From positions 1 to 64,000 of the IMG/VR virus record IMGVR_UViG_3300024503_000485: DNA of 64,000 nt. One strand, written 5' to 3'. The notes beneath the pieces were generated by a model. The model had not been told where the DNA came from. It was given only the letters and a program-made list of their open reading frames with translations, and did not search any database. Positions 16,632-28,902 of this stretch are shown here, in pieces (positions within the stretch are counted from its first letter, which is position 1; every line of letters starts with the position of its first letter). A program made the translations under genes and the position numbers.

Positions 16632-16708
16632 CACGCATTAGCTCAGTTGGATAGAGCAACAGCCTTCTAAGCTGTGGGTCAGGGGTTCGAATCCCTTATG
16701 CGTGGCCA
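16632..16708 (+). tRNA. tRNA-Arg (anticodon UCU)
   Basis: Cloverleaf: acceptor CACGCAT/ATGCGTG, anticodon arm ACAGC-CTTCTAA-GCTGT, TTCGAAT T-loop, encoded CCA. Confidence 0.95.
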
Positions 16709-16712
16709 GTTA

Positions 16713-16790
<78 letters not shown>

Positions 16791-16832: not shown

Positions 16833-17097
16833 TGTCCAAACGGCTGTGATCGTGTACAATATGCATTTAAACAAGGACAGCAATGACAGCACTACAGCAA
16901 AAGTTCTACGCTGCGTTAGCCTCGCTACAGCAGCACACAAATTTAGATGACGAAGAACAGCAAGACGCAATTGCTGCACTCGCGCAGCTAATCGAGGATC
17001 ACGTCAAATAACCCTAGGCCCTCTAGGGTCTTAGACAAAATTGGTTGACATTTTGGCGCAGAGATCGTACAATATACATATGTTGAAGGAGCGGCGA

Positions 17098-17418
17098 ATG
17101 CGAGCAAAGAGATCAGATCGTAATCACATCATCTATGAACTACGTGTTAACGGTGAGAACTACATTGGTGTCACAGCCAAGACTGAATCAACTATTAATA
17201 AGAGTGTTCGCGCTCGTGCTGCCAAGCACTTCTATCGTGCCAAAACAGAAACTAAGAATTGGCTGCTTTGCTCAGCTCTACGCAAGCTCAACAGCAAAGA
17301 AGAAATTGAAATCATTGTTCACGAGATTGTTCGTGGCAAAGCCCTGGCCCATAAGCGCGAAGTAGAAATCCGCAGACTGGTAGGCCCTACACTAAACACA
17401 GACACACGAGGAGACTAA
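17098..17418 (+). CDS. GIY-YIG-like protein
   Basis: HIIYEL...YIGVT; GGAGCG RBS. Confidence 0.55.
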   Translation: MRAKRSDRNHIIYELRVNGENYIGVTAKTESTINKSVRARAAKHFYRAKTETKNWLLCSALRKLNSKEEIEIIVHEIVRGKALAHKREVEIRRLVGPTLNTDTRGD

Positions 17419-17419
17419 C

Positions 17420-17674
17420 ATGGACTTGACCGTAGAAATGTATCGTATAGATCGTCGCTGCAAAGCGGGCCGAGTACTAGTAATGAAGCAGGACTACACA
17501 GACGTGAGCTGGGCCCAAATGGAGCGCATGTACCCACGTCGTCCACGCTACATCGTAGAGTTTCACGAGACTTGGGTTACAAAGACTAACCTTATGACGG
17601 GCTTGCCCTATCAGGAACGTTACGATACCCCACATTGCTGTTCAGCAGCCAGCGAGACCTACTGGAGCATGTAG
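17420..17674 (+). CDS. hypothetical protein
   Basis: GAGGAGA RBS. Confidence 0.65.
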   Translation: MDLTVEMYRIDRRCKAGRVLVMKQDYTDVSWAQMERMYPRRPRYIVEFHETWVTKTNLMTGLPYQERYDTPHCCSAASETYWSM

Positions 17675-17734
17675 GGGTTGACAACTAGGAATTTTGGCAG
17701 TATAATACAGGCTTACAACGTTAAGGAGCGACCT

Positions 17735-17911
17735 ATGACTAACCCAATCCCTTCTAGCAACATTTGGCACACACCCGCAGATCTCAACGAGCTGCAGGAT
17801 ATGATCAATCAGTTCACAGGCCAGGAAGCTGCGCTGGCTGCACACGTGATGATGTTGACCCTGAACACCTGCCACAAATTAGTCGATGAAGCTATCAAGG
17901 AGGCCGCATGA
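17735..17911 (+). CDS. small early protein
   Basis: Own promoter plus AAGGAGCGACCT RBS. Confidence 0.7.
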   Translation: MTNPIPSSNIWHTPADLNELQDMINQFTGQEAALAAHVMMLTLNTCHKLVDEAIKEAA

Positions 17912-18273
17912 GGTACTGGGACGAACTGCTGCGCGAGCAGCGTAATGGTCTAACCGTGATCGTGGACAAGACCTGGGAAGACTGCTCTATTCGCGATCTC
18001 TTTGATGAAAGCTGCTGTGATGTAGAGGACCTGGAACGTAAGGTTAACAGGGGCGATTTGGATTGGTTTATGCTCAGAGCTCGCGTCATGTACAATGATC
18101 TGGAACTGGGCTCAGAGATCTGTGGAGGGTTCCTCTACGAAGATGCTCGCGATGTGCTGCGTGATGGTATGGCTGACGAGATGATCTGGCAAGCAGAGGA
18201 AGAAGCCAAACGACAATTACCCGGCCTTATTGAAGGGTTATTGCGTGTAGAGGTTGACAAATTGGCTGCGTGA
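17908..18273 (+). CDS. hypothetical early protein
   Basis: GGAGG RBS, ATGA overlap. Confidence 0.65.
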   Translation: MRYWDELLREQRNGLTVIVDKTWEDCSIRDLFDESCCDVEDLERKVNRGDLDWFMLRARVMYNDLELGSEICGGFLYEDARDVLRDGMADEMIWQAEEEAKRQLPGLIEGLLRVEVDKLAA

Positions 18274-18309
18274 GCATACAATAGAGACTTAGCAACAAAG
18301 GAGCGCGAT

Positions 18310-18648
18310 ATGCAGACACTTTTTAGCACAGCAGGCGACGGCTTGTGGAGCAACGTAGCAAAGCCTGTACACATTGTAGACATGCAACTTGCCTACATTA
18401 ACGACGAGAGAGATTTTGGCGAGCTGCGTGTTTACTTTAACACTAAGTTTTGGGACGTTAACAAAGACGGTCTCATTTACACAGACAGCAACTTTATTGA
18501 AGAACTGCGCAATTTTTTAATTGCACAAGAACTAACTGACGACTGCGACTACAGCGAGCAAGGCATGCAGGGAGACAACTACGTTAGCTTAGACGTGGGA
18601 GAGGGCTTTATTGCTGCGTGGGATGCAAAGTTTAACTTGTTTGCATAA
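18310..18648 (+). CDS. hypothetical early protein
   Basis: Own promoter plus GGAGCG RBS. Confidence 0.7.
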   Translation: MQTLFSTAGDGLWSNVAKPVHIVDMQLAYINDERDFGELRVYFNTKFWDVNKDGLIYTDSNFIEELRNFLIAQELTDDCDYSEQGMQGDNYVSLDVGEGFIAAWDAKFNLFA

Positions 18649-18720
18649 GCACAAAACGGGGGTTGACAACAGCCCCCGTTTATAGTACAATAGACACACA
18701 TTAACACAAAGGAGCGTGAA

Positions 18721-19143
18721 ATGGCTACTCGAAGCACTATTGCAATGGAGCAACCCGACGGTCGCGTAATGCAGATCTACTGCCACTGGGACGGTTACCT
18801 TGATCACAACGGAGAGATCCTTCAGGAGCACTATCGTGATCGCGCTAAGGTTTTGGCACTCATGTATCTGGGCGATATCAGCTCCTTAGCTCCTAGCATC
18901 GGAGAACCGCACGATTGGGACAACTGCCCTGAGGGTGTCTGCAACGCCTACGGACGCGATCGTGGCGAATCGGGCTGTGAAGCTCGTGTGTTCAAGGACT
19001 TTGAGGACTACAAGGCCAACCACCAGTACGAAGAATACGAGTATATCTTCCGTTCGGACGATCAGTGGTATGTTTCCGAATACAGCCGAGCCTACCGCGC
19101 ACTTGAGCAGGTGCTGGCAGAAGCAGAAACCCTAGAGGATTAA
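18721..19143 (+). CDS. hypothetical early protein (MATRSTI...IYCHWDGY family)
   Basis: Own promoter plus GGAGCG RBS. Confidence 0.7.
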   Translation: MATRSTIAMEQPDGRVMQIYCHWDGYLDHNGEILQEHYRDRAKVLALMYLGDISSLAPSIGEPHDWDNCPEGVCNAYGRDRGESGCEARVFKDFEDYKANHQYEEYEYIFRSDDQWYVSEYSRAYRALEQVLAEAETLED

Positions 19144-19224
19144 GGGTTATTACTGAATGGGGTTGACAACAGCCTCATTTGGTAATATAATAGAGGTATG
19201 TTCAACAAATGCATAGGAGCGAAA

Positions 19225-20298
19225 ATGCCAGCAGTAATTGAGATTCGTGAGGGTTCGTATAAGATCCGTGGCTCAGATGTGAGCATGGCCGGTAACCGTT
19301 TCGAACTAGTAGAGCAATACAAAGAAGGTGCTCAGGGTGGTTATGTAACCGTAGAAGGTGGCTCTGTACAGCCTGCTAACCCTGGCATTCCAGATCGTAA
19401 GATCCGTATTCGTTGCAGTTCAGCACAAAGTTACATGATTGTCGCCGGTGAAGTGCCAGCAATGCCCGCAGGTGATAAAAGTTTGGAGCAGATTAAAATT
19501 TCAGATAATGCCGTAGCACACGAAACGGACGAGCAGATCATCGAACGTCTTCGTAACCGTTTTGACGTGCTCAAAGATATGACCAAAGCAGTCAAAGAAG
19601 GTACCGTGCGAGCTATGATCGTCACAGGCCCTCCAGGCGTGGGCAAGAGCTTTGGTGTAGAAGAAGTACTAAGCAAGGACGATCTCTTTGATATGATGGG
19701 TCAGCGCAAGCCCAAATATGAGATTGTCAAAGGCGCAATGTCAGCAGTGGGTCTGTACAGCAAGCTCTATCACTACAGCGAAAAAGGCAATGTTATCGTG
19801 TTTGATGACTGCGACTCTGTGCTGTTGGATGACCTTAGCCTTAATATTTTGAAGGCTGCTCTGGACTCTAGCAAGAAGCGTACTATCTCTTGGAACACTG
19901 ACAGCCGTGTTCTGCGTTCAGAAGGAGTGCCAGATCGCTTTGAATTTAAAGCAGGCGCTATCTTTATCACTAACATCAAGTTTGAGAATGTGCGTTCTAA
20001 GAAACTGCAGGATCACCTTGCCGCTCTTGAAAGCCGTTGCCACTACATTGATCTTCAAATGGACACAGATCGCGAAAAGGTCTTGCGCATTAAGCAGATC
20101 ACCCAAGATGGCATGTTGGACAGCTACGAGTTTGAAGACTGCGTTAAGGATGAGATCATTGATTACATTCTTGAAAAACGAGCACAAATGCGTGAGCTGA
20201 GCCTGCGTACGGTACTCAAGGTAGCAGACCTGCGCAAGAGCTTTCCTACAAATTGGAAGAGCATGGCAGAAGTTACCGTTATGAAGCGAGGTGCCTAA
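19225..20298 (+). CDS. AAA+ ATPase
   Basis: Walker A GPPGVGKS, Walker B IVFDDCD, ALESR arginine finger; start at ATG 19225 after GGAGCG. Confidence 0.85.
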   Translation: MPAVIEIREGSYKIRGSDVSMAGNRFELVEQYKEGAQGGYVTVEGGSVQPANPGIPDRKIRIRCSSAQSYMIVAGEVPAMPAGDKSLEQIKISDNAVAHETDEQIIERLRNRFDVLKDMTKAVKEGTVRAMIVTGPPGVGKSFGVEEVLSKDDLFDMMGQRKPKYEIVKGAMSAVGLYSKLYHYSEKGNVIVFDDCDSVLLDDLSLNILKAALDSSKKRTISWNTDSRVLRSEGVPDRFEFKAGAIFITNIKFENVRSKKLQDHLAALESRCHYIDLQMDTDREKVLRIKQITQDGMLDSYEFEDCVKDEIIDYILEKRAQMRELSLRTVLKVADLRKSFPTNWKSMAEVTVMKRGA

Positions 20299-20540
20299 TG
20301 GAAGGCCCGTCTAAGACCTGTACTTGGATTGGGCCCGAGCAGGACCCTTTGAAGCACTGGCCCATTCATTACTGCGGGTGTCCTAGTGTTCAAGGGTCTA
20401 GCTACTGCGCTGATCACTACTGGAAGGTCTATGCTCGAGGCACTTCAGTTAACGGCCGTCGACGTGAACGTGCCATAGAGCAAGAGATTCAACAACTTAA
20501 ACAAGCACAAGAGCTTGAGGAGTATGAAAATGAAAACTAA
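20298..20540 (+). CDS. GcrA C-terminal-like Cys-rich protein
   Basis: TCTWIG...HYCG...GSSYCADH resembles the GcrA pattern CxWPIG...FCG...GxxYCxxH. Confidence 0.55.
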   Translation: MEGPSKTCTWIGPEQDPLKHWPIHYCGCPSVQGSSYCADHYWKVYARGTSVNGRRRERAIEQEIQQLKQAQELEEYENEN

Positions 20541-20810
20541 CATCTTTACAATTGCCCTGCTGGCGCTTGTAATCGTATTCTTTTTTGCCGTAGGTCCTAT
20601 CCTGGTAATTTGGAGTATGAATACACTATTCCCCGTGTTGGCCATTCCGTATACGTTTTGGACATGGTTAAGCGTGGTCTTGCTCGGCGCATTCTTTCGA
20701 GCAAATGTTTCCATTAAACGGAAAGATTGAGGTTGCTATTTTACAACAAGAATGCTACTATATTGACACGCTGTGGAACACAGCCATATAACATAAAGGA
20801 AAACACAGAC

Positions 20811-21086
20811 ATGAAACGTATCTCTAAAGACTCAAAGACTTTTAAGATTTTTACTGCACTACAAAATGGTGACAAACTAACTGCAAGCCAAGCTGAGAAG
20901 CGTTTTGGCGTAAAGAACCTGGCTGCTGAAGCAAGCCGTCTCCGCCAAGCTGGTTATGCTGTTTATGCTAACTCTCGCAAGGCAGGTAATGGTGTTACCG
21001 TTACTGAGTATGAACTAGGCCGTCCTTCACGCGAGATCGTTGCTCTAGGCTACTTAGCTCGTAACATGGGCATGACATTGGCTTAA
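20811..21086 (+). CDS. winged helix-turn-helix DNA-binding protein
   Basis: LQNGDKLTASQAEKRFGVKNLAAEASRLRQAGYAVY...YELG; AAGGA RBS. Confidence 0.75.
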   Translation: MKRISKDSKTFKIFTALQNGDKLTASQAEKRFGVKNLAAEASRLRQAGYAVYANSRKAGNGVTVTEYELGRPSREIVALGYLARNMGMTLA

Positions 21087-21162
21087 TAGGTCGCTCCACA
21101 AAACCAAGCCGATTCGCTCCCGGGGCGGTTTTGGAATAGGGTCCTAAGGGCCCTATTTTTTT
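21086..21162 (+). ncRNA. candidate 3'UTR anti-RBS sRNA A
   Basis: Seed ATAGGTCGCTCC; hairpin CAAAACC/GGTTTTG enclosing CCG-ATTCGCTCC-CGG; terminator AATAGGGTCC-TAA-GGGCCCTATT plus T-run. Confidence 0.55.
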
Positions 21163-21257
21163 GGCCGTTTGTTGCAAAAAAGCCACAGGCCGGCACTCTC
21201 CAAAATGGTTGACAGAACTGCTGTTTGATGGTATAATAGAGTTATTGTTAAGGAGCG

Positions 21258-21905
21258 ATGATGAGCACATTTACAGCAGATCAAGTTTGGGGCCTAGCTG
21301 TTAGGGCTGATACACAGAATGGCGGCTACTGCAAAGAGCCTGTATTCGCTGCTACCGCTACACACGGGATCGATTACAATAACGTGATCAAACAAGCCAA
21401 CAAGGTTCTGGTCAAGAACTGGCTCAGAGAGAATGCTCAGCCTACAGCAGAAGAGATCACTCTTGGCCAAGAGTATCGTAACTATTTCAAAACATTCACC
21501 CTCAAAGCACTCACTGGCAAGATCAATGACTTTGAGACCACAGCTATGAAGATTGCAGCCAAAGACGAGTTCACTGGCCGTGATATGTTGGACTTTGCTG
21601 TTGTCAGCTGTTTACCCAGCGTAGCTCGTCGTGATAAGGCCCAAACAGAGCTCAAGCGAGAGATCTATCAAAGCGAGCAACTCTCCGGCGCTGTAGGTGA
21701 TGAGATCGTAGGGGAGATCGAAGTGATCCGCACACGATTCAACCCTGAATACAACAAGTATCGCATCACTGCTCGTATGGGTGAGAGCTTTATTGATTTT
21801 TGGTACAAGGATGATGTCAAAGGCACTATCCGTATCAAGGGCAAGATCAAGAATGTTCGTGGCGATAAAACAACACAGCTCAACTATGTTAAAAAAGTTG
21901 GTTGA
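21258..21905 (+). CDS. hypothetical early protein (possible C-terminal OB fold)
   Basis: Own promoter plus GGAGCG RBS; ends KGKIK...TQLNYVK. Confidence 0.7.
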   Translation: MMSTFTADQVWGLAVRADTQNGGYCKEPVFAATATHGIDYNNVIKQANKVLVKNWLRENAQPTAEEITLGQEYRNYFKTFTLKALTGKINDFETTAMKIAAKDEFTGRDMLDFAVVSCLPSVARRDKAQTELKREIYQSEQLSGAVGDEIVGEIEVIRTRFNPEYNKYRITARMGESFIDFWYKDDVKGTIRIKGKIKNVRGDKTTQLNYVKKVG

Positions 21906-21982
21906 CAACTGCACCAAGAGGTGCTACAATAATGATACTGGGAAAGTAATTGTTTTAACTCTTTTTATTAGCGAGGTCTAGA

Positions 21983-23068
21983 ATGGCAAAAGCACAAGAC
22001 GTTTCCGTCCGTCAAGTTGGCCCTAAGGGTGCCAAAAAAGCAATCCGTCACGCAATTAAAATGCGTCGTCCTGTATTCCTGTGGGGCCCTCCAGGTATTG
22101 GTAAGTCCGATCTCGTGAAGCAGATCGGTGATGATTCCAACCGTGAGGTTATTGATGTGCGCCTAGCACTTTGGGAACCCACCGACATCAAAGGTATTCC
22201 GTATTACAACGCAGACCAGGGCAAGATGGTTTGGGCTCCTCCCGCAGAACTGCCCATTGACCCAGAGTCCACTGCTATCATCTTCTTGGATGAATTGAAC
22301 TCTGCTCCTCCTGCTGTTCAGGCCGCGGCCTATCAGTTGGTGCTGAACCGTCGTGTTGGTACCTATGTTCTGCCTAAGGGTGTTGACGTAGTCGCCGCTG
22401 GTAACCGTGAAGGTGACCGTGGTGTTACCTATCGTATGCCTGCTCCGTTGGCTAACCGCTTCCTGCACTTGGAAATGAAGGTGGACTTTGATGACTGGCA
22501 AGATTGGGCTACCCTTAACAAGGTGCATCCTGAGGTTGTAGGTTATGTGGGTTTTGCCAAGCAAGACTTGTATGACTTCGATCCTAAGAGCCCTAGCAAG
22601 TCATTTGCTACTCCTCGTTCTTGGAGTTTCGTCAGCGACCTGTTAGGTGATGACGGTGTTGACGAAGATACTTTGTCTACATTGGTAAGTGGTGCTATTG
22701 GTGACGGCTTGGCTGTTAAGTTTATGGCTCACCGTAAGATTGCTGGCAAATTGCCTAAGGCAGAAGACATCCTTATTGGCAAGGTCAAGGACCTTCAGAT
22801 CAAGGAAGTGTCAGCGATGTATTCTTTGACCGTTTCATTGTGCTACGAGTTGAAAGACCGTGCAGAGAAAAAGGTTAAAGATTGGGATGCTCAGGCAGAC
22901 AACTTCTTCCGCTACATGATGGACAATTTCCCAACTGAGATTGTGGTCATGGGTGCTAAGACTGCTCTTACCAACTACGACTTGCCGTTGGACGCTACAA
23001 AGATGAAGAGCTTTGACGAGTTCCACAAGCGTTTTGGTAAGTATGTTTTGAAAGCGATGGAGAATTAA
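21983..23068 (+). CDS. MoxR-like AAA+ ATPase
   Basis: GPPGIGKS, IIFLDE, AAGNR, PLANRF, TPRSW. Confidence 0.9.
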   Translation: MAKAQDVSVRQVGPKGAKKAIRHAIKMRRPVFLWGPPGIGKSDLVKQIGDDSNREVIDVRLALWEPTDIKGIPYYNADQGKMVWAPPAELPIDPESTAIIFLDELNSAPPAVQAAAYQLVLNRRVGTYVLPKGVDVVAAGNREGDRGVTYRMPAPLANRFLHLEMKVDFDDWQDWATLNKVHPEVVGYVGFAKQDLYDFDPKSPSKSFATPRSWSFVSDLLGDDGVDEDTLSTLVSGAIGDGLAVKFMAHRKIAGKLPKAEDILIGKVKDLQIKEVSAMYSLTVSLCYELKDRAEKKVKDWDAQADNFFRYMMDNFPTEIVVMGAKTALTNYDLPLDATKMKSFDEFHKRFGKYVLKAMEN

Positions 23069-23225
23069 GACCTCGCCCATCGCCGGGCGGGGGCTCACCC
23101 AGGGCTTCCGCCCACCTTTTGGAGTGCCGGGCGGTGTTGTAAATACGCAACATCGTCCGGTTTCTTTTTGGTTGACAAACCCGGATCCTGGTGCTATAAT
23201 ATACACATACTAAGGAGAGCGACTA

Positions 23226-24434
23226 ATGTCTACAAACATCGTTGATAAATTAACTACTGCACGGGTCGGTCTATTGCTCAAAGCACCGTTCTTTGGCAAC
23301 ATGGCAACTCGTATGCGTTTAGTCTGTGCTGACGACTGGTGCCCTACTGCGGCGACCAATGGCCGTGACTTTTATTACAACACAAAGTTCATCGAAAAAC
23401 TTTCAGAGAAAAAACTAGAGTTCCTGTTTGGTCACGAGATCCTTCACTGCGTGTTTGATCACTTTGGCCGTGTAGGTAGCCGTGATCGTCAACTTTCTAA
23501 CATCGCACAGGACTTTGCTGTAAACCAAATCCTTGTAGACGAGCGTATTGGTGAGAAGATCACTGAGGTTAAGATCTGTTATGATCCTAAGTTCCGTGGA
23601 CTTGCTTGGGAAGAAATCTACGATATTCTGTATGAAAAAGCAGAGAAGATTCCTATGGATCAACTGATGAAAGAGTTGGGCGATCTGTTGGACGAGCACA
23701 TTAAGGAACAAGAGGGTGCTGGCTCAGAAGATGACAAGACCAAAGACGGTAAGAGCAAGCCTAGCCTTAGCAAAGAAGAAGCAGAACGCATCAAGCAAGA
23801 GATCAAAGAAGCAATGATCCAAAGTGCCGCGGCCGCTGGTGCAGGCAAGACTCCTGCAGGCATTATGCGTATGATTAAGTCTATGACTGAGCCTAAGATG
23901 GACTGGCGTCAGTTGGTGCAACAAGAGATCCAAAGCATTGTTCGCAACGACTACTCCTTCCAGCGTGTTAATCGCAAGAGTATGCACTCAGGCGCAATCT
24001 TGCCAGGCATGAAAGAAGCAACTACCATTGACGTGGCTATTGCTGTTGACATGAGTGGTAGTATTGGTGAAGAAGATGCCAGCACATTCCTTTCGGAGAT
24101 CAAAGGCATCATGGACCAATACGAGGACTTCAAGATCAACCTGTGGTGCTTTGACACAGAGATCTATAACCCACAAGAGATCACTCATGACAACTCACAT
24201 GACTTGCTTGAGTATGAACCTCAAGGTGGCGGTGGCACAGACTTTGATGTCAACTTTACCTACATGGAAGAGAATGACATTCGCCCTAAGAAGTTCATTA
24301 TGTTCACAGACGGCTATCCCTGTGGTAGTTGGGGTCCTGAGGACTACTGCGACACAATCTTTATCGTTAAGGGCAATACACAAGCAGAGGCGCCCTTTGG
24401 TCAAACGGTGATCTACGAAAAAGAGGCGGGCTAG
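23226..24434 (+). CDS. putative metallopeptidase plus VWA domain protein (DUF2201-like)
   Basis: TAATNG, HEILH (HExxH), DMSGS MIDAS, GGGGTDF, MFTDG. Confidence 0.9.
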   Translation: MSTNIVDKLTTARVGLLLKAPFFGNMATRMRLVCADDWCPTAATNGRDFYYNTKFIEKLSEKKLEFLFGHEILHCVFDHFGRVGSRDRQLSNIAQDFAVNQILVDERIGEKITEVKICYDPKFRGLAWEEIYDILYEKAEKIPMDQLMKELGDLLDEHIKEQEGAGSEDDKTKDGKSKPSLSKEEAERIKQEIKEAMIQSAAAAGAGKTPAGIMRMIKSMTEPKMDWRQLVQQEIQSIVRNDYSFQRVNRKSMHSGAILPGMKEATTIDVAIAVDMSGSIGEEDASTFLSEIKGIMDQYEDFKINLWCFDTEIYNPQEITHDNSHDLLEYEPQGGGGTDFDVNFTYMEENDIRPKKFIMFTDGYPCGSWGPEDYCDTIFIVKGNTQAEAPFGQTVIYEKEAG

Positions 24435-25550
24435 GAGAGTGCCGGGGGGTGTGGCTAAAAAGCCACACTTCCACCAAAGGCCCCGCTGCTACACGTATGC
24501 ACGTATATAGATTATGGTTGACAGATAGATAATTTGGCCTTATAATACATATACACAGACACAGAAAGGGGCGGTAAATGGAACTAGTAATTGCATTTGT
24601 CCTTGGGCTCATAGTAATGGACTTAATGTGGGCCTGGCGCTTGGGCATCCCTCAGATGCTTTGGGCACGTTGGAAGTATCGCAAAGTCCTTAAACAAATG
24701 TCAGAACAGGAGCAATCATGAAAGTATTCATCGCAGGTACAATCTTTGGTCTCGTAGTGGCTACCGTAGGATTATCGGGCATCGCTAAGATCTTCGATAA
24801 TGGGGTTGCCAAAGTCCAGGAAGTATCTAAAGAAGCTGCGAAGTAATGCCTAGATACACGTTCTGGCGCAATTCTATAATCTGCGAAGTCTACGAACTTG
24901 AAGCAGGTTCAGAAGAGGAAGCACGTGAAAAGCTCATGAATGGAGAAGTGGACCCAATGACCGAAGAATGGGTTGATTGGGCCACTGACAACTTCGAGCT
25001 GGAAGACGTGGAAGATGAATTGGTAACATTCTTAAAATCAAAGGAAACAACATGACTTTTGGTATGATCGTTGAAGATCCCTTTTATGATGAAGATGGTG
25101 TACTCATTGACGAGGATGCTGATTGGGAAGATGTTGCAGACCCGGGCGACCTAGTCTACAACGAAGACATCGGCGAATGGTTGGACAAAGAGCTAGCTGC
25201 TCACGATCGCACCTACAGCCCATTCGATACAATCAACAGCTAACGTACATCATTTTGGTTGACAACTTGGCTTTTTGGTGTTAAACTATAGGCATAGTGA
25301 AAGGAGCCAGCTGTGAATCAAAATGAATTTGAATACCTGAAGCGAGCCGTTGATGCATTGGGATCGTCAGAGACAACTCCGATGGCCCGTGTCAAGATCT
25401 TAAGGACGATGGAGCAGATCGCCGGACGCTGTGCCGTGGTGATCGAGAGGGAGTTCCAAGACCGCGTAGATCAGAACTTGGCCAATGCACATTTGGTTGA
25501 CCTTTTGAGAAAATGATTGTATAATTTTAACACTAACTTAAGGAGCGAAT

Positions 25551-26741: not shown

Positions 26742-27044
26742 ATGGCTACAGATAAGAAATTTGCGGTTGCTGGTGTTTCGACACTGGAAGGTAAGACCAA
26801 GCTTCGTTTCGCTAACGATGTTATGCGCATCAAGATCTTGGCAAAGAACGGTCACAAGGATGTTGAGCTCGTTGAGCTGCCATCAGAGATGACCAAGGCT
26901 GAGGCTGTACAACACCTCAAGAGCGTTGGTTTCGGCTCAGGCAATGCTGCTGTACAAGCTGCGATCGCCTACGCTGAGAAGAAGAATCCAGCCCCTAAAG
27001 CTGTTAAGACTACTGCCGCGAAGGCAGAGGCTGTTACCGCTTAA
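26742..27044 (+). CDS. small basic phage protein with Ala/Lys-rich tail
   Basis: FAVAGVS...KLRFAND.MRIKILAKNGH; own promoter. Confidence 0.75.
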   Translation: MATDKKFAVAGVSTLEGKTKLRFANDVMRIKILAKNGHKDVELVELPSEMTKAEAVQHLKSVGFGSGNAAVQAAIAYAEKKNPAPKAVKTTAAKAEAVTA

Positions 27045-27113
27045 ATCCGATTCGCTCCCGGTAGCGGTAACCTTGGGCCCTAGTATGCACACGTATACTA
27101 GGGCGTTTTTTTT
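27033..27113 (+). ncRNA. candidate 3'UTR anti-RBS sRNA B
   Basis: GTTACCGCT/AGCGGTAAC stem enclosing CCG-ATTCGCTCC-CGG; terminator GCCCTAGTAT/ATACTAGGGC plus T8. Confidence 0.55.
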
Positions 27114-28469: not shown

Positions 28470-28548
28470 GGGTTATTCAAAAAAGTGGTTGACAACAGCC
28501 TCTAGATCGCATATAATACAAGCTCAACAAACAACTTAGGAGCGAAAC

Positions 28549-28902
28549 ATGGAAGCACAAGCACGTGAGTATTTTGTCCGTCGTCTTAACGAAGTAGCAC
28601 AAGAAAAAGTGCAGGCCAAAGCAGTAGAACTTTACGGCGCAAGTGGCCGTCCAGAACAGCCTACTTGGGGCATGGTGTTTGAGGGCATTAAATCCGGCGA
28701 GATTACCCTTAAAGCAGACAAGGTGGACTATACGGGTCCTTACCTCAACCCTACGGACGTGGAGTGGCCTGCTATGGAAGCCAAAAAGGCAGAGCTGGAA
28801 GCATATCGCAAGTTGGTAGCCGCTGAGAAGCAACGGGCTATGGACGCTGTCTATTTGGACGAGAGCGCACAAGAAGCCCTTAAGGCTTTTGAAGCAATTT
28901 AA
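28549..28902 (+). CDS. hypothetical early protein
   Basis: Own promoter plus GGAGCGAA RBS, followed by terminator 28911-28936. Confidence 0.7.
   Translation: MEAQAREYFVRRLNEVAQEKVQAKAVELYGASGRPEQPTWGMVFEGIKSGEITLKADKVDYTGPYLNPTDVEWPAMEAKKAELEAYRKLVAAEKQRAMDAVYLDESAQEALKAFEAI

What the first reader, a model, noticed from the sequence alone, without database searches (positions are those of the whole stretch)
21086..21097. Second seed in sRNA A is a perfect 12-nt antisense to one specific early RBS and start codon
Seen: ATAGGTCGCTCC (21086-21097) is the exact reverse complement of GGAGCGACCTAT (17725-17736), which covers the SD and the AT of the start codon of the 17735 gene. It also pairs 7 nt (GAGCGAC) with the RBS of the metallopeptidase-VWA gene. 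Inference: sRNA A carries two tandem seeds with different target preferences.
Basis: partly seen in the sequence, partly recalled or inferred. Interest (0 to 1): 0.7.

Follow-up and report, generated by a model that had tools for sequence, protein, structure and literature searches.

The report
Spare anti-ribosome-site seed in phage 3'UTR
The 12-base match is real, but only its 6-7-base core (CGCUCC) is conserved: it is a second copy of an element that a large family of uncultured T4-like freshwater phages carries in a 3'UTR hairpin loop, complementary to the unusual ribosome-binding site (AAGGAGCGA) of their early genes, and the extra five bases that single out one gene look like coincidence.

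Summary
Observation confirmed. Window 21086-21097 is the exact reverse complement of 17725-17736 (SD plus the AT of ATG 17735). GAGCGAC also sits at 23217-23223, just before the DUF2201 metallopeptidase/VWA gene.

A bare 12-mer inverted match means little: the window holds 256 of them, against about 153 in shuffles. What matters is the core. TCGCTCC complements GGAGCGA, the signature SD of this phage family's sigma70-driven early genes (307 copies in 611 kb of relatives, 289 just before an ATG).

The same core sits in the loop of a hairpin, CCGATTCGCTCCCGG, at 21109-21123 and 27047-27061. In an unbiased set, 40 of 44 distinct orthologous 3'UTRs keep this 15-mer exactly, although the upstream HTH protein is only 52-81% identical. 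The outer stems differ in sequence but stay complementary. Rfam has no match.

The second seed is rare: 4 of 78 UTRs. Its flanks do not covary with the RBS of the 17735 gene (8 bp in L081, 7 bp in L026). Both halves of the extension also occur separately in relatives.

Verdict: a real extra anti-SD seed in the 3'UTR of the HTH_39 mRNA. The "one specific target" reading is not supported. No separate sRNA is shown.

The parts
17678..17706 (+). Perfect sigma70-type promoter (TTGACA-N17-TATAAT) of the 17735 gene
17725..17736 (+). Target arm GGAGCGACCTAT: the family-type extended SD (AAGGAGCGA), the spacer, and the AT of the start codon
   Evidence: orthologues all keep GGAGCGA or GAGCGA but vary in the spacer
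17735..17911 (+). 58-aa ORF of unknown function with a conserved N-terminal NPIP motif; no Pfam or PHROG match
20763..20792 (+). Promoter-like site of the HTH gene (TTGACA-N18-TATAAC). It encloses the inverted repeat GCTGTGGAACACAGC (20770-20784), which covaries in relatives
20811..21086 (+). 91-aa winged-helix gene (Pfam HTH_39, phrog_4973). Its SD is AAAGGAAA, not GGAGCG. Its mRNA carries the seeds in its 3'UTR
21086..21097 (+). The reported 12-mer ATAGGTCGCTCC ('seed 2'). The conserved core is TCGCTCC, 21091-21097. It starts on the last base of the stop codon and the core is predicted mostly unpaired
21099..21133 (+). Conserved anti-SD hairpin A. Outer stem 21099-21105 / 21127-21133; CCG 21109-21111 / CGG 21121-21123; 9-nt loop AUUCGCUCC 21112-21120
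21134..21162 (+). Intrinsic terminator: 11-bp GC-rich stem 21134-21158 overlapping the T run 21156-21162
21209..21258 (+). Next cassette: perfect sigma70 promoter 21209-21237 and SD GGAGCGA 21252-21258 of the 215-aa gene that starts at 21258
23217..23223 (+). GAGCGAC within the SD region (AAGGAGAGCGAC) of the DUF2201 metallopeptidase/VWA-like gene 23226-24434
27033..27071 (+). Second copy of the hairpin (B). The outer stem 27033-27041 / 27063-27071 includes the last codons of gene 26742-27044. Motif 27047-27061, loop 27050-27058. Terminator 27077-27104 follows
19216..19222 (+). GGAGCGA SD of the AAA ATPase gene (ATG 19225). Further copies at 25542-25548 and 28539-28545. All lie directly downstream of sigma70 promoters

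Best explanation
The 12-mer is a composite.

Its 3' part, (U)CGCUCC, is a second, unstructured copy of an anti-Shine-Dalgarno element. T4-type freshwater and riverine phages keep this element almost invariant in the apical loop of a hairpin in the 3'UTR of a small winged-helix (HTH_39) gene, and after a few other early genes. The element is complementary to AAGGAGCGA(A), the signature ribosome-binding site of about half of the promoter-proximal early genes of these phages. The CGA(A) extension of that site does not match the 16S anti-SD.

Inferred mechanism: the 3'UTR, either as part of the HTH mRNA or as a 3' fragment of it, pairs in trans with these SDs and blocks 30S binding. This would damp or shut off early-gene translation as the HTH transcript accumulates. 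The CGA extension would confine the pairing to phage early mRNAs.

Seed 2 adds a single-stranded copy directly after the stop codon, where a terminating ribosome would probably cover it.

The 5' part of the 12-mer (AUAGG, pairing with CCUAU) is most likely a coincidence of two ancestral sequences: TAATAGG after the stop codon, and the ACCTATG spacer. In this phage the 17735 RBS is therefore the strongest predicted partner, but not an evolved dedicated one.

Shown: sequence identity, conservation, hairpin structure, complementarity, and avoidance of the SD type by the carrier mRNAs. Inferred: the pairing in vivo, repression, and its timing.
For: - Exact match and uniqueness in the genome.
- Family SD: in 76 related loci (611 kb) GGAGCGA occurs 307 times on the gene strand, 289 of them with ATG 4-9 nt after GGAG. 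The next GGAGNNN word occurs 70 times. The next bases are AA in 441 cases.
- In the window's own genome GGAGCGA is the top SD word only in the sigma70 early region: 5 of 25 there, against 3 of 120 elsewhere.
- Hairpin conservation: 76 of 78 distinct HTH 3'UTRs carry CGCTCC. In loci fetched by the AAA protein rather than by the motif, 40 of 44 keep the exact 15-mer and 43 of 44 keep TCGCTCC, at 52-81% protein identity.
- Hairpin structure: 84 of 105 distinct instances fold with 5 or more pairs enclosing the motif. The true flank pairs of 175 instances (130 distinct arm sequences) have a median duplex energy of -11.9 kcal/mol, against -7.1 for swapped flanks.
- Trans geometry: 271 of 308 promoter-proximal GGAGCGA SDs have no hairpin within 220 nt upstream.
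- Self-avoidance: the mRNAs that carry the hairpin never use a GGAGCG SD. This holds for 0 of 70 distinct HTH leaders and 0 of 13 hairpin-bearing orthologues of gene 26742-27044, against about 55% of promoter-proximal genes overall.
- Seed 2 core is kept while its flanks diverge in 4 UTRs.
- The extension does not covary.
- Metatranscriptome contigs span both seeds and the terminator.
Against: - There is no direct evidence of RNA-RNA pairing or repression.
- The loop and the SD are both nearly invariant, so loop-to-SD covariation could not be tested.
- The RNA data are assembled contigs without local depth or ends. They may include DNA, and some run past the terminator.
- The self-avoidance counts are not phylogenetically independent. 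The orthologues of gene 26742-27044 that lack the hairpin (12) also lack GGAGCG.
- The 0.8% estimate for the extension is low enough that a recent, lineage-specific strengthening towards the 17735 RBS cannot be excluded.
- Only two or three informative relatives exist between identical copies and 86% identity.
Confidence: 0.55

Rival explanations
1. One reading: seed 2 is an evolved, dedicated seed whose 12-nt pairing specifically represses the 58-aa gene at 17735, while the loop seed serves other targets.
For: - The 17735 RBS is the best non-self partner in the genome (-24.2 kcal/mol). It is 7 kcal/mol better than any other early RBS.
- The extension has about a 0.8% chance given the core.
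- The core of the seed is predicted mostly unpaired.
Against: - No covariation: 8 bp in L081 and 7 bp in L026.
- No RBS complement of 10 nt or more for seed 2 in the records holding L003 and L081.
- Both halves of the extension occur independently in relatives.
- The window holds 256 other inverted repeats of 12 nt or more.
- A non-RBS site scores -24.1.
Confidence: 0.15
2. Cis action, as in T4 genes e, soc and I-TevI: in transcripts that read through the terminator, the upstream anti-SD copies fold back on the SD of the next gene (GGAGCGA at 21252-21258). Only transcripts started at that gene's own promoter (21209) would then be translated.
For: - The geometry fits for hairpin A: seeds at 21091-21120, promoter at 21209, SD at 21252.
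- GGAGCGA is somewhat more frequent on genes that follow a hairpin: 59% against 44%.
- Some metatranscriptome contigs run through the terminator.
Against: - The gene after hairpin B has no GGAGCG SD.
- About 32-41% of the genes that follow a hairpin lack the SD type, depending on whether any GGAGCG or only exact GGAGCGA counts, and 88% of GGAGCGA SDs have no upstream hairpin.
- A strong terminator lies between the seeds and the SD.
Confidence: 0.15
3. The hairpin is conserved for another reason, and its complementarity to the SD is a by-product. It could be a protein-binding or processing site, or part of a PeSL-type mobile terminator-promoter-SD cassette kept uniform by recombination. Seed 2 would then be a remnant of such an exchange.
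For: - The layout (stem-loop, near-perfect sigma70 promoter, SD, start) is that of the PeSLs of T4-type phages (PMC4122927; PMC2839356).
- The phage is T4-type (Gp23 hit).
- The early module is mosaic across contigs.
Against: - An 8-nt loop that is the exact complement of the commonest 8-nt SD word is very unlikely as a by-product.
- Stems that covary around an invariant loop point to selection at the RNA level.
- Carrier mRNAs avoid the SD type.
- Published PeSL stem-loops are simple G-rich/C-rich or A/T-flanked stems; the text read (one keyword look-up) mentions no conserved loop.
Confidence: 0.1
4. Seed 2 is a chance CGCTCC with no function of its own; only the hairpin matters.
For: Seed 2 is present in only 4 of 78 distinct orthologous UTRs, so most relatives do without it.
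Against: - A given hexamer in a spacer of about 20 nt is expected in about 0.5% of UTRs (my calculation).
- It is kept at the same position, 4-5 nt after the stop, in four UTRs whose flanks differ.
- Four other UTRs have two hairpin copies, so doubling the element recurs.
Confidence: 0.05

Closest known systems
PeSLs (promoter-early stem-loops) of T4-type phages (Arbiol et al. 2010, PMC2839356; Comeau et al. 2014, PMC4122927)
   Same: Repeated intergenic cassettes in the hyperplastic early regions of T4-type phages: a stem-loop or terminator, then a near-consensus sigma70 promoter, an SD and a start codon. The window has about 17 such promoters, 10 of them perfect matches, and the phage has a T4-type capsid gene.
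   Different: PeSL stem-loops are described by their stems only. The text read here mentions no conserved loop and no loop-SD complementarity. Here a 15-17-nt motif is nearly invariant, its loop complements the cassette's own extended SD, and it occurs at only a few of the cassettes.
Cis RBS-sequestering hairpins of T4 (genes e, soc, I-TevI) - from my own knowledge, not checked here
   Same: An upstream anti-SD sequence and a promoter placed between it and the SD, in a T4-type phage.
   Different: In those cases the anti-SD lies tens of nt from one SD and acts on one gene. Here one or two elements face many identical SDs, most of them kilobases away.
C-rich-loop regulatory RNAs of Gram-positive bacteria (RsaE, RNAIII: UCCC loops that pair with SDs) and 3'UTR-derived sRNAs - from my own knowledge
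   Same: A C-rich seed (CGCUCCC) shown in a hairpin loop or in single-stranded RNA next to an intrinsic terminator, complementary to SD regions of several mRNAs, and located in a 3'UTR.
   Different: No sequence or Rfam relationship. The element is phage-encoded. The targets share a private SD extension (CGAA). No separate transcript has been shown.
T4 RegB and RegA (protein-based shut-off of early mRNAs at their SD regions) - from my own knowledge
   Same: The same regulatory logic: early mRNAs are marked by a special SD context (GGAG) and turned off after transcription.
   Different: Those regulators are proteins. No RegB or RegA Pfam match was found in the 219 kb held, which is a 62%-complete record. 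Here the candidate effector is an RNA.

Membership tests
Trans-acting base-pairing sRNA (3'UTR-derived type) | A discrete stable transcript with defined ends | tested here: inconclusive
   Only assembled metatranscriptome contigs are available. Contigs 20907-21175, 20881-21220, 20915-21201 and 21063-21325 include both seeds and the 3' half of the HTH ORF. There is no information on ends.
Trans-acting base-pairing sRNA (3'UTR-derived type) | An own promoter, or a processing site, upstream of the seed | tested here: not met
   No sigma70-like site lies between the HTH promoter (20763) and 21209. Processing cannot be tested with these tools.
Trans-acting base-pairing sRNA (3'UTR-derived type) | An intrinsic terminator at the 3' end | tested here: met
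   11-bp stem 21134-21158 and T run 21156-21162. Conserved in relatives.
Trans-acting base-pairing sRNA (3'UTR-derived type) | A seed conserved across relatives and complementary to conserved target sites | tested here: met
   For the core only. TCGCTCC is in 43 of 44 unbiased UTRs. GGAGCGA is the dominant SD word.
   8 bp in L081 and 7 bp in L026. The flanks occur independently in relatives.
PeSL cassette of T4-type phages | A stem-loop just upstream of a sigma70-like early promoter, followed by an SD and a start codon, repeated in a T4-type genome | tested here: met
   Definition taken from PMC4122927.
PeSL cassette of T4-type phages | Association with gene gain, loss or shuffling between close relatives | not tested
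   Gene content around the AAA gene differs between loci, but no breakpoint analysis was done.
Any Rfam 15 family | A covariance-model match | tested here: not met
   At gathering score only two tRNAs matched in the window. At E up to 10 on 20990-21210 there were only two weak matches, driven by the terminator.
T4-type cis RBS-sequestering hairpin | The anti-SD always paired with the SD of the next gene downstream | tested here: inconclusive
   59% of genes after a hairpin have GGAGCGA against 44% of the others. Hairpin B is not followed by such an SD.

The most novel reading that the evidence does not exclude
A large family of uncultured T4-type freshwater phages runs a private SD / anti-SD system. 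About half of their promoter-proximal early genes carry the extended SD AAGGAGCGA(A). One to three nearly invariant hairpin loops (AUUCGCUCC) in the 3'UTRs of a regulator gene and a few other genes act as an RNA-only global repressor of early translation, an RNA counterpart of T4 RegA/RegB. Extra unstructured copies such as 21091-21097 tune its strength, and in this phage single out the 17735 gene.
Probability: 0.4. Interest if true: 0.8.

Novelty: new variant of a known kind. Interest (0 to 1): 0.5.

Why it matters
On its own, the 12-mer would be a minor curiosity. Its core, however, leads to a strongly conserved, undescribed RNA hairpin. It has no Rfam family, no cultured phage in the collection searched carries it, and two targeted full-text literature searches found no description of it. 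Its loop is the exact complement of a family-specific extension of the ribosome-binding site of early genes.

If the pairing works, it would be a simple, purely RNA-based way for a lytic phage to time the shut-off of its early genes without touching host mRNAs. It would also explain why these SDs depart from the 16S-complementary consensus.

It is directly testable in E. coli with reporters, because the promoters and SD cores are of the sigma70 / AAGGAG type. The SD/anti-SD pair could also serve as an orthogonal translational switch.

Tried and rejected
- Megablast of 17000-22000 against 50,697 phage records: no match.
- blastn of the hairpin against the same records: only chance hits inside coding sequences.
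- Rfam at gathering score and at loose E-values: nothing.
- MAFFT plus RNAalifold on 75 and on 64 instances recovered only the invariant CCG/CGG pairs, because linker lengths differ and the outer stems fall in different columns. I replaced this with per-sequence folds and a swapped-flank control. I built no covariance model, so divergent copies may have been missed.
- A covariation test between loop variants and SD variants was not informative. The UAGUCGCUCC-loop lineage has too few GGAGCG SDs. The lineage in which GGAGCGG dominates keeps the standard loop, which a G-U pair accommodates.
- RegB (PF10715) and RegA (PF01818): no match in the 219 kb held. The record is 62% complete and the control genomes did not ring either, so this is not evidence of absence.
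- The homologous region of Pseudomonas phage PA5oct has neither the SD word nor the motif.
- Scan of bacterial genomes with the 18-mer: 31 hits. Of these, 28 are chance matches in GC-rich genomes and 3 are family-like short contigs in MAGs of unrelated taxa. No host was identified.
- Metatranscriptome runs are held only as assembled contigs. No transcript ends, strand or local depth could be read. The contig break at 20787/20788 in X3, and the common contig starts near 20877-20915, may reflect branching in the assembly graph.
About 20 of its 105 distinct hits are chance matches outside the family.

Full report
**1. The observation**

Window 21086-21097 reads ATAGGTCGCTCC and 17725-17736 reads GGAGCGACCTAT. 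They are exact reverse complements and the only two copies in the 219,444-base virus record that holds the window. The first arm begins on the last base of the TAA stop (21084-21086) of the gene 20811-21086. The second arm runs from the GGAG of the SD to the AT of ATG 17735. GAGCGAC also lies at 23217-23223, just before ATG 23226 of a DUF2201_N/DUF2201 (metallopeptidase/VWA-like) gene.

Length alone is not evidence. The window has 256 distinct exact inverted repeats of 12 nt or more with arms over 200 nt apart, against about 153 in shuffles.

**2. Setting**

The record is an uncultured, 62%-complete virus contig with a T4-type major capsid gene (Gp23, E = 3e-98). Between about 15.7 and 34.5 kb the + strand carries about 17 perfect or one-mismatch sigma70 promoters (10 of them perfect), usually GGTTGACA-N17-TATAAT. 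Nine of these are followed by an SD of the form AAGGAGCG. This region has 45-48% G+C against 31-41% elsewhere.

The layout is that of the PeSL cassettes described for T4-type phages: a stem-loop or terminator, an early promoter, an SD and a start codon (PMC4122927).

The gene upstream of the finding encodes a 91-aa winged-helix protein (Pfam HTH_39, phrog_4973). In order it contains:
- the 12-mer at 21086-21097;
- a hairpin at 21099-21133;
- an intrinsic terminator at 21134-21162.

No promoter-like site lies between the HTH gene's own promoter and 21209.

**3. The core belongs to a conserved element**

The hairpin contains CCGATTCGCTCCCGG (21109-21123). The same 15-mer recurs at 27047-27061, 2 nt after the stop codon of gene 26742-27044 and again followed by a terminator. 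There are no other copies in the genome.

Chance matches are expected in a collection of that size, and about 20 of the 105 distinct hits are chance. In 84 of the 105, however, the motif sits at the top of a hairpin whose outer stem differs in sequence from case to case.

For 175 distinct instances (130 distinct arm sequences) the true left and right flanks pair with a median of -11.9 kcal/mol. Swapped flanks give -7.1.

In loci fetched through the neighbouring AAA ATPase, so not selected by the motif, 40 of 44 distinct HTH 3'UTRs keep the exact 15-mer and 43 of 44 keep TCGCTCC. The HTH protein in these loci is only 52-81% identical.

The element is not otherwise known:
- Rfam 15 has no match.
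- No cultured phage in the collection has it.
- In bacterial genomes it appears only on three short contigs that are probably mis-binned.

**4. What the loop is complementary to**

In 76 related loci (611 kb) GGAGCGA occurs 307 times on the gene strand, 289 of them with an ATG 4-9 nt after GGAG. The next GGAGNNN word has 70 occurrences. The following bases are mostly AA.

The family SD is therefore AAGGAGCGAA. Only AAGGAG can pair with the 16S tail (general knowledge). GGAGCGAA is the exact complement of the loop's UUCGCUCC.

In this genome the word is typical of the sigma70 early region only: 5 of 25 GGAG-type SDs there, against 3 of 120 elsewhere.

Most such SDs (271 of 308 promoter-proximal cases) have no hairpin within 220 nt upstream. 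The relation is therefore few loops to many SDs, which fits action in trans better than action in cis.

The mRNAs that carry the hairpin never use this SD. This holds for 0 of 70 distinct HTH leaders, which all use AAAGGAAA-type SDs, and for 0 of 13 hairpin-bearing orthologues of gene 26742-27044. About 55% of promoter-proximal genes overall use it. These counts are not phylogenetically independent, and the orthologues of the second gene that lack the hairpin also lack the SD.

**5. Seed 2 itself**

Of 78 distinct orthologous UTRs, eight have two CGCTCC copies. Four of these (this phage, L081, L003, L026) have an unstructured copy 4-5 nt after the stop codon. The other four have two hairpins.

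In the first four the hexamer is constant while the flanks differ: GGT/ACA, AGT/TAA, GTT/TCA and ATA/TAA. This suggests selection on the core only.

- L081: the 17735 orthologue (86% identical) has GGAGCGAATGATG against seed 2 GAGTCGCTCCT, which gives 8 bp.
- L026: GGAGCGATGTATG against ATACGCTCCT, which gives 7 bp.
- The records that hold L003 and L081 contain no RBS with 10 nt or more of complementarity to their seed 2.
- TAATAGG after the stop also occurs in UTRs without CGCTCC (L033, L053, L111).
- A(A)CCTATG spacers also occur in 17735 orthologues of phages without seed 2 (L145, L096, L034).
- Eight contigs of the same phage are 100% identical over the region and so add nothing.

Given the core, and with 8 RBS-located GGAGCGA sites, a 5-nt extension has a chance of about 0.8%. 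This is low, but the match was noticed after the fact.

Computed energies do differ. Seed 2 gives -24.0 kcal/mol with the 17735 RBS, against -16.6, -15.6 and -15.1 for the next best. The loop prefers GGAGCGAA sites at -14 to -15.5. A non-RBS site at 28759 reaches -24.1 with seed 2. The core of seed 2 is predicted mostly unpaired. Lying 0-11 nt after the stop codon, it would probably be covered by a terminating ribosome (inference).

**6. RNA evidence**

Thirty riverine metatranscriptome runs hold the region, but only as assembled contigs. In four runs with low coverage of the phage, contigs 20907-21175, 20881-21220, 20915-21201 and 21063-21325 cover the 3' half of the HTH ORF, both seeds and the terminator. 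In run X26 this is almost the only early-region piece assembled.

This shows that the seeds are present in RNA libraries on a species continuous with the ORF. It does not show transcript ends, processing, or that the material is RNA rather than carried-over DNA.

**7. Conclusion**

The inference that the 3'UTR carries two anti-SD seeds is reasonable and is supported for the core.

The claim of a seed devoted to one specific RBS is not supported. The extension is best read as coincidence or, less likely, as a recent lineage-specific gain.

The more interesting result is the family-wide pair of an invariant anti-SD hairpin loop and a private extended SD. It is undescribed as far as these tools can tell, and it suggests RNA-based control of early-gene translation in T4-type freshwater phages. 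That mechanism is inferred and not shown. The rivals are cis sequestration in read-through transcripts, a protein-binding or recombination cassette role, and a functionless seed 2.

Noticed in passing
window 20770-20784: The inverted repeat GCTGTGGAACACAGC lies in the promoter/leader of the HTH_39 gene. Relatives keep a GCTG...CAGC stem-loop or palindrome at the same place with different inner sequence. It is a candidate operator for autoregulation, or a 5' stabilising hairpin.
   Followed up: partly
window 21188-21201: GGCCGGCACTCTCC lies between the terminator and the -35 of the 21209 promoter. GGCCGGCACTC(C/T) recurs at the same place in many relatives. Function unknown; it could be an upstream promoter element or a factor-binding site.
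   Followed up: no
window 12000-34000 against the rest: The sigma70-promoter early region has 45-48% G+C, while most of the remaining window has 31-41%. The module occurs, in mosaic form, in viral contigs from 4 kb to 364 kb.
   Followed up: partly
window 16632-16790: Two phage tRNA genes, tRNA-Arg(TCT) and tRNA-Met(CAT), lie at the start of the early region. In the metatranscriptomes this stretch attracts high-depth contigs from other organisms.
   Followed up: no
window 21983-24434: A MoxR-type AAA ATPase (21983-23068) is followed by a DUF2201 metallopeptidase/VWA-like protein (23226-24434). Each has its own sigma70 promoter in the early region.
   Followed up: no
window 19198-20298: An AAA ATPase related to T4-type nrdC.10-like proteins and to a PA5oct protein annotated 'thioredoxin' (47% identity over 70% of its length). 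It is 65-90% identical across more than 300 viral contigs. The true start is probably ATG 19225, which lies behind a GGAGCGA SD.
   Followed up: partly
L046/L047/L068/L190-L192 and L007/L008, L213, L163-L171: Natural variants of the element. One lineage has SDs that are mostly GGAGCGG while keeping the standard loop; a G-U pair keeps these compatible. Loop variants CGCUCU, ACUCGCUCC and UAGUCGCUCC also occur. These are useful starting points for a covariation study.
   Followed up: partly
G000:C1:117205-118188 (outside the window): A T4-type major capsid protein gene (Pfam Gp23, E = 3e-98). It places the phage in the T4 superfamily.
   Followed up: no
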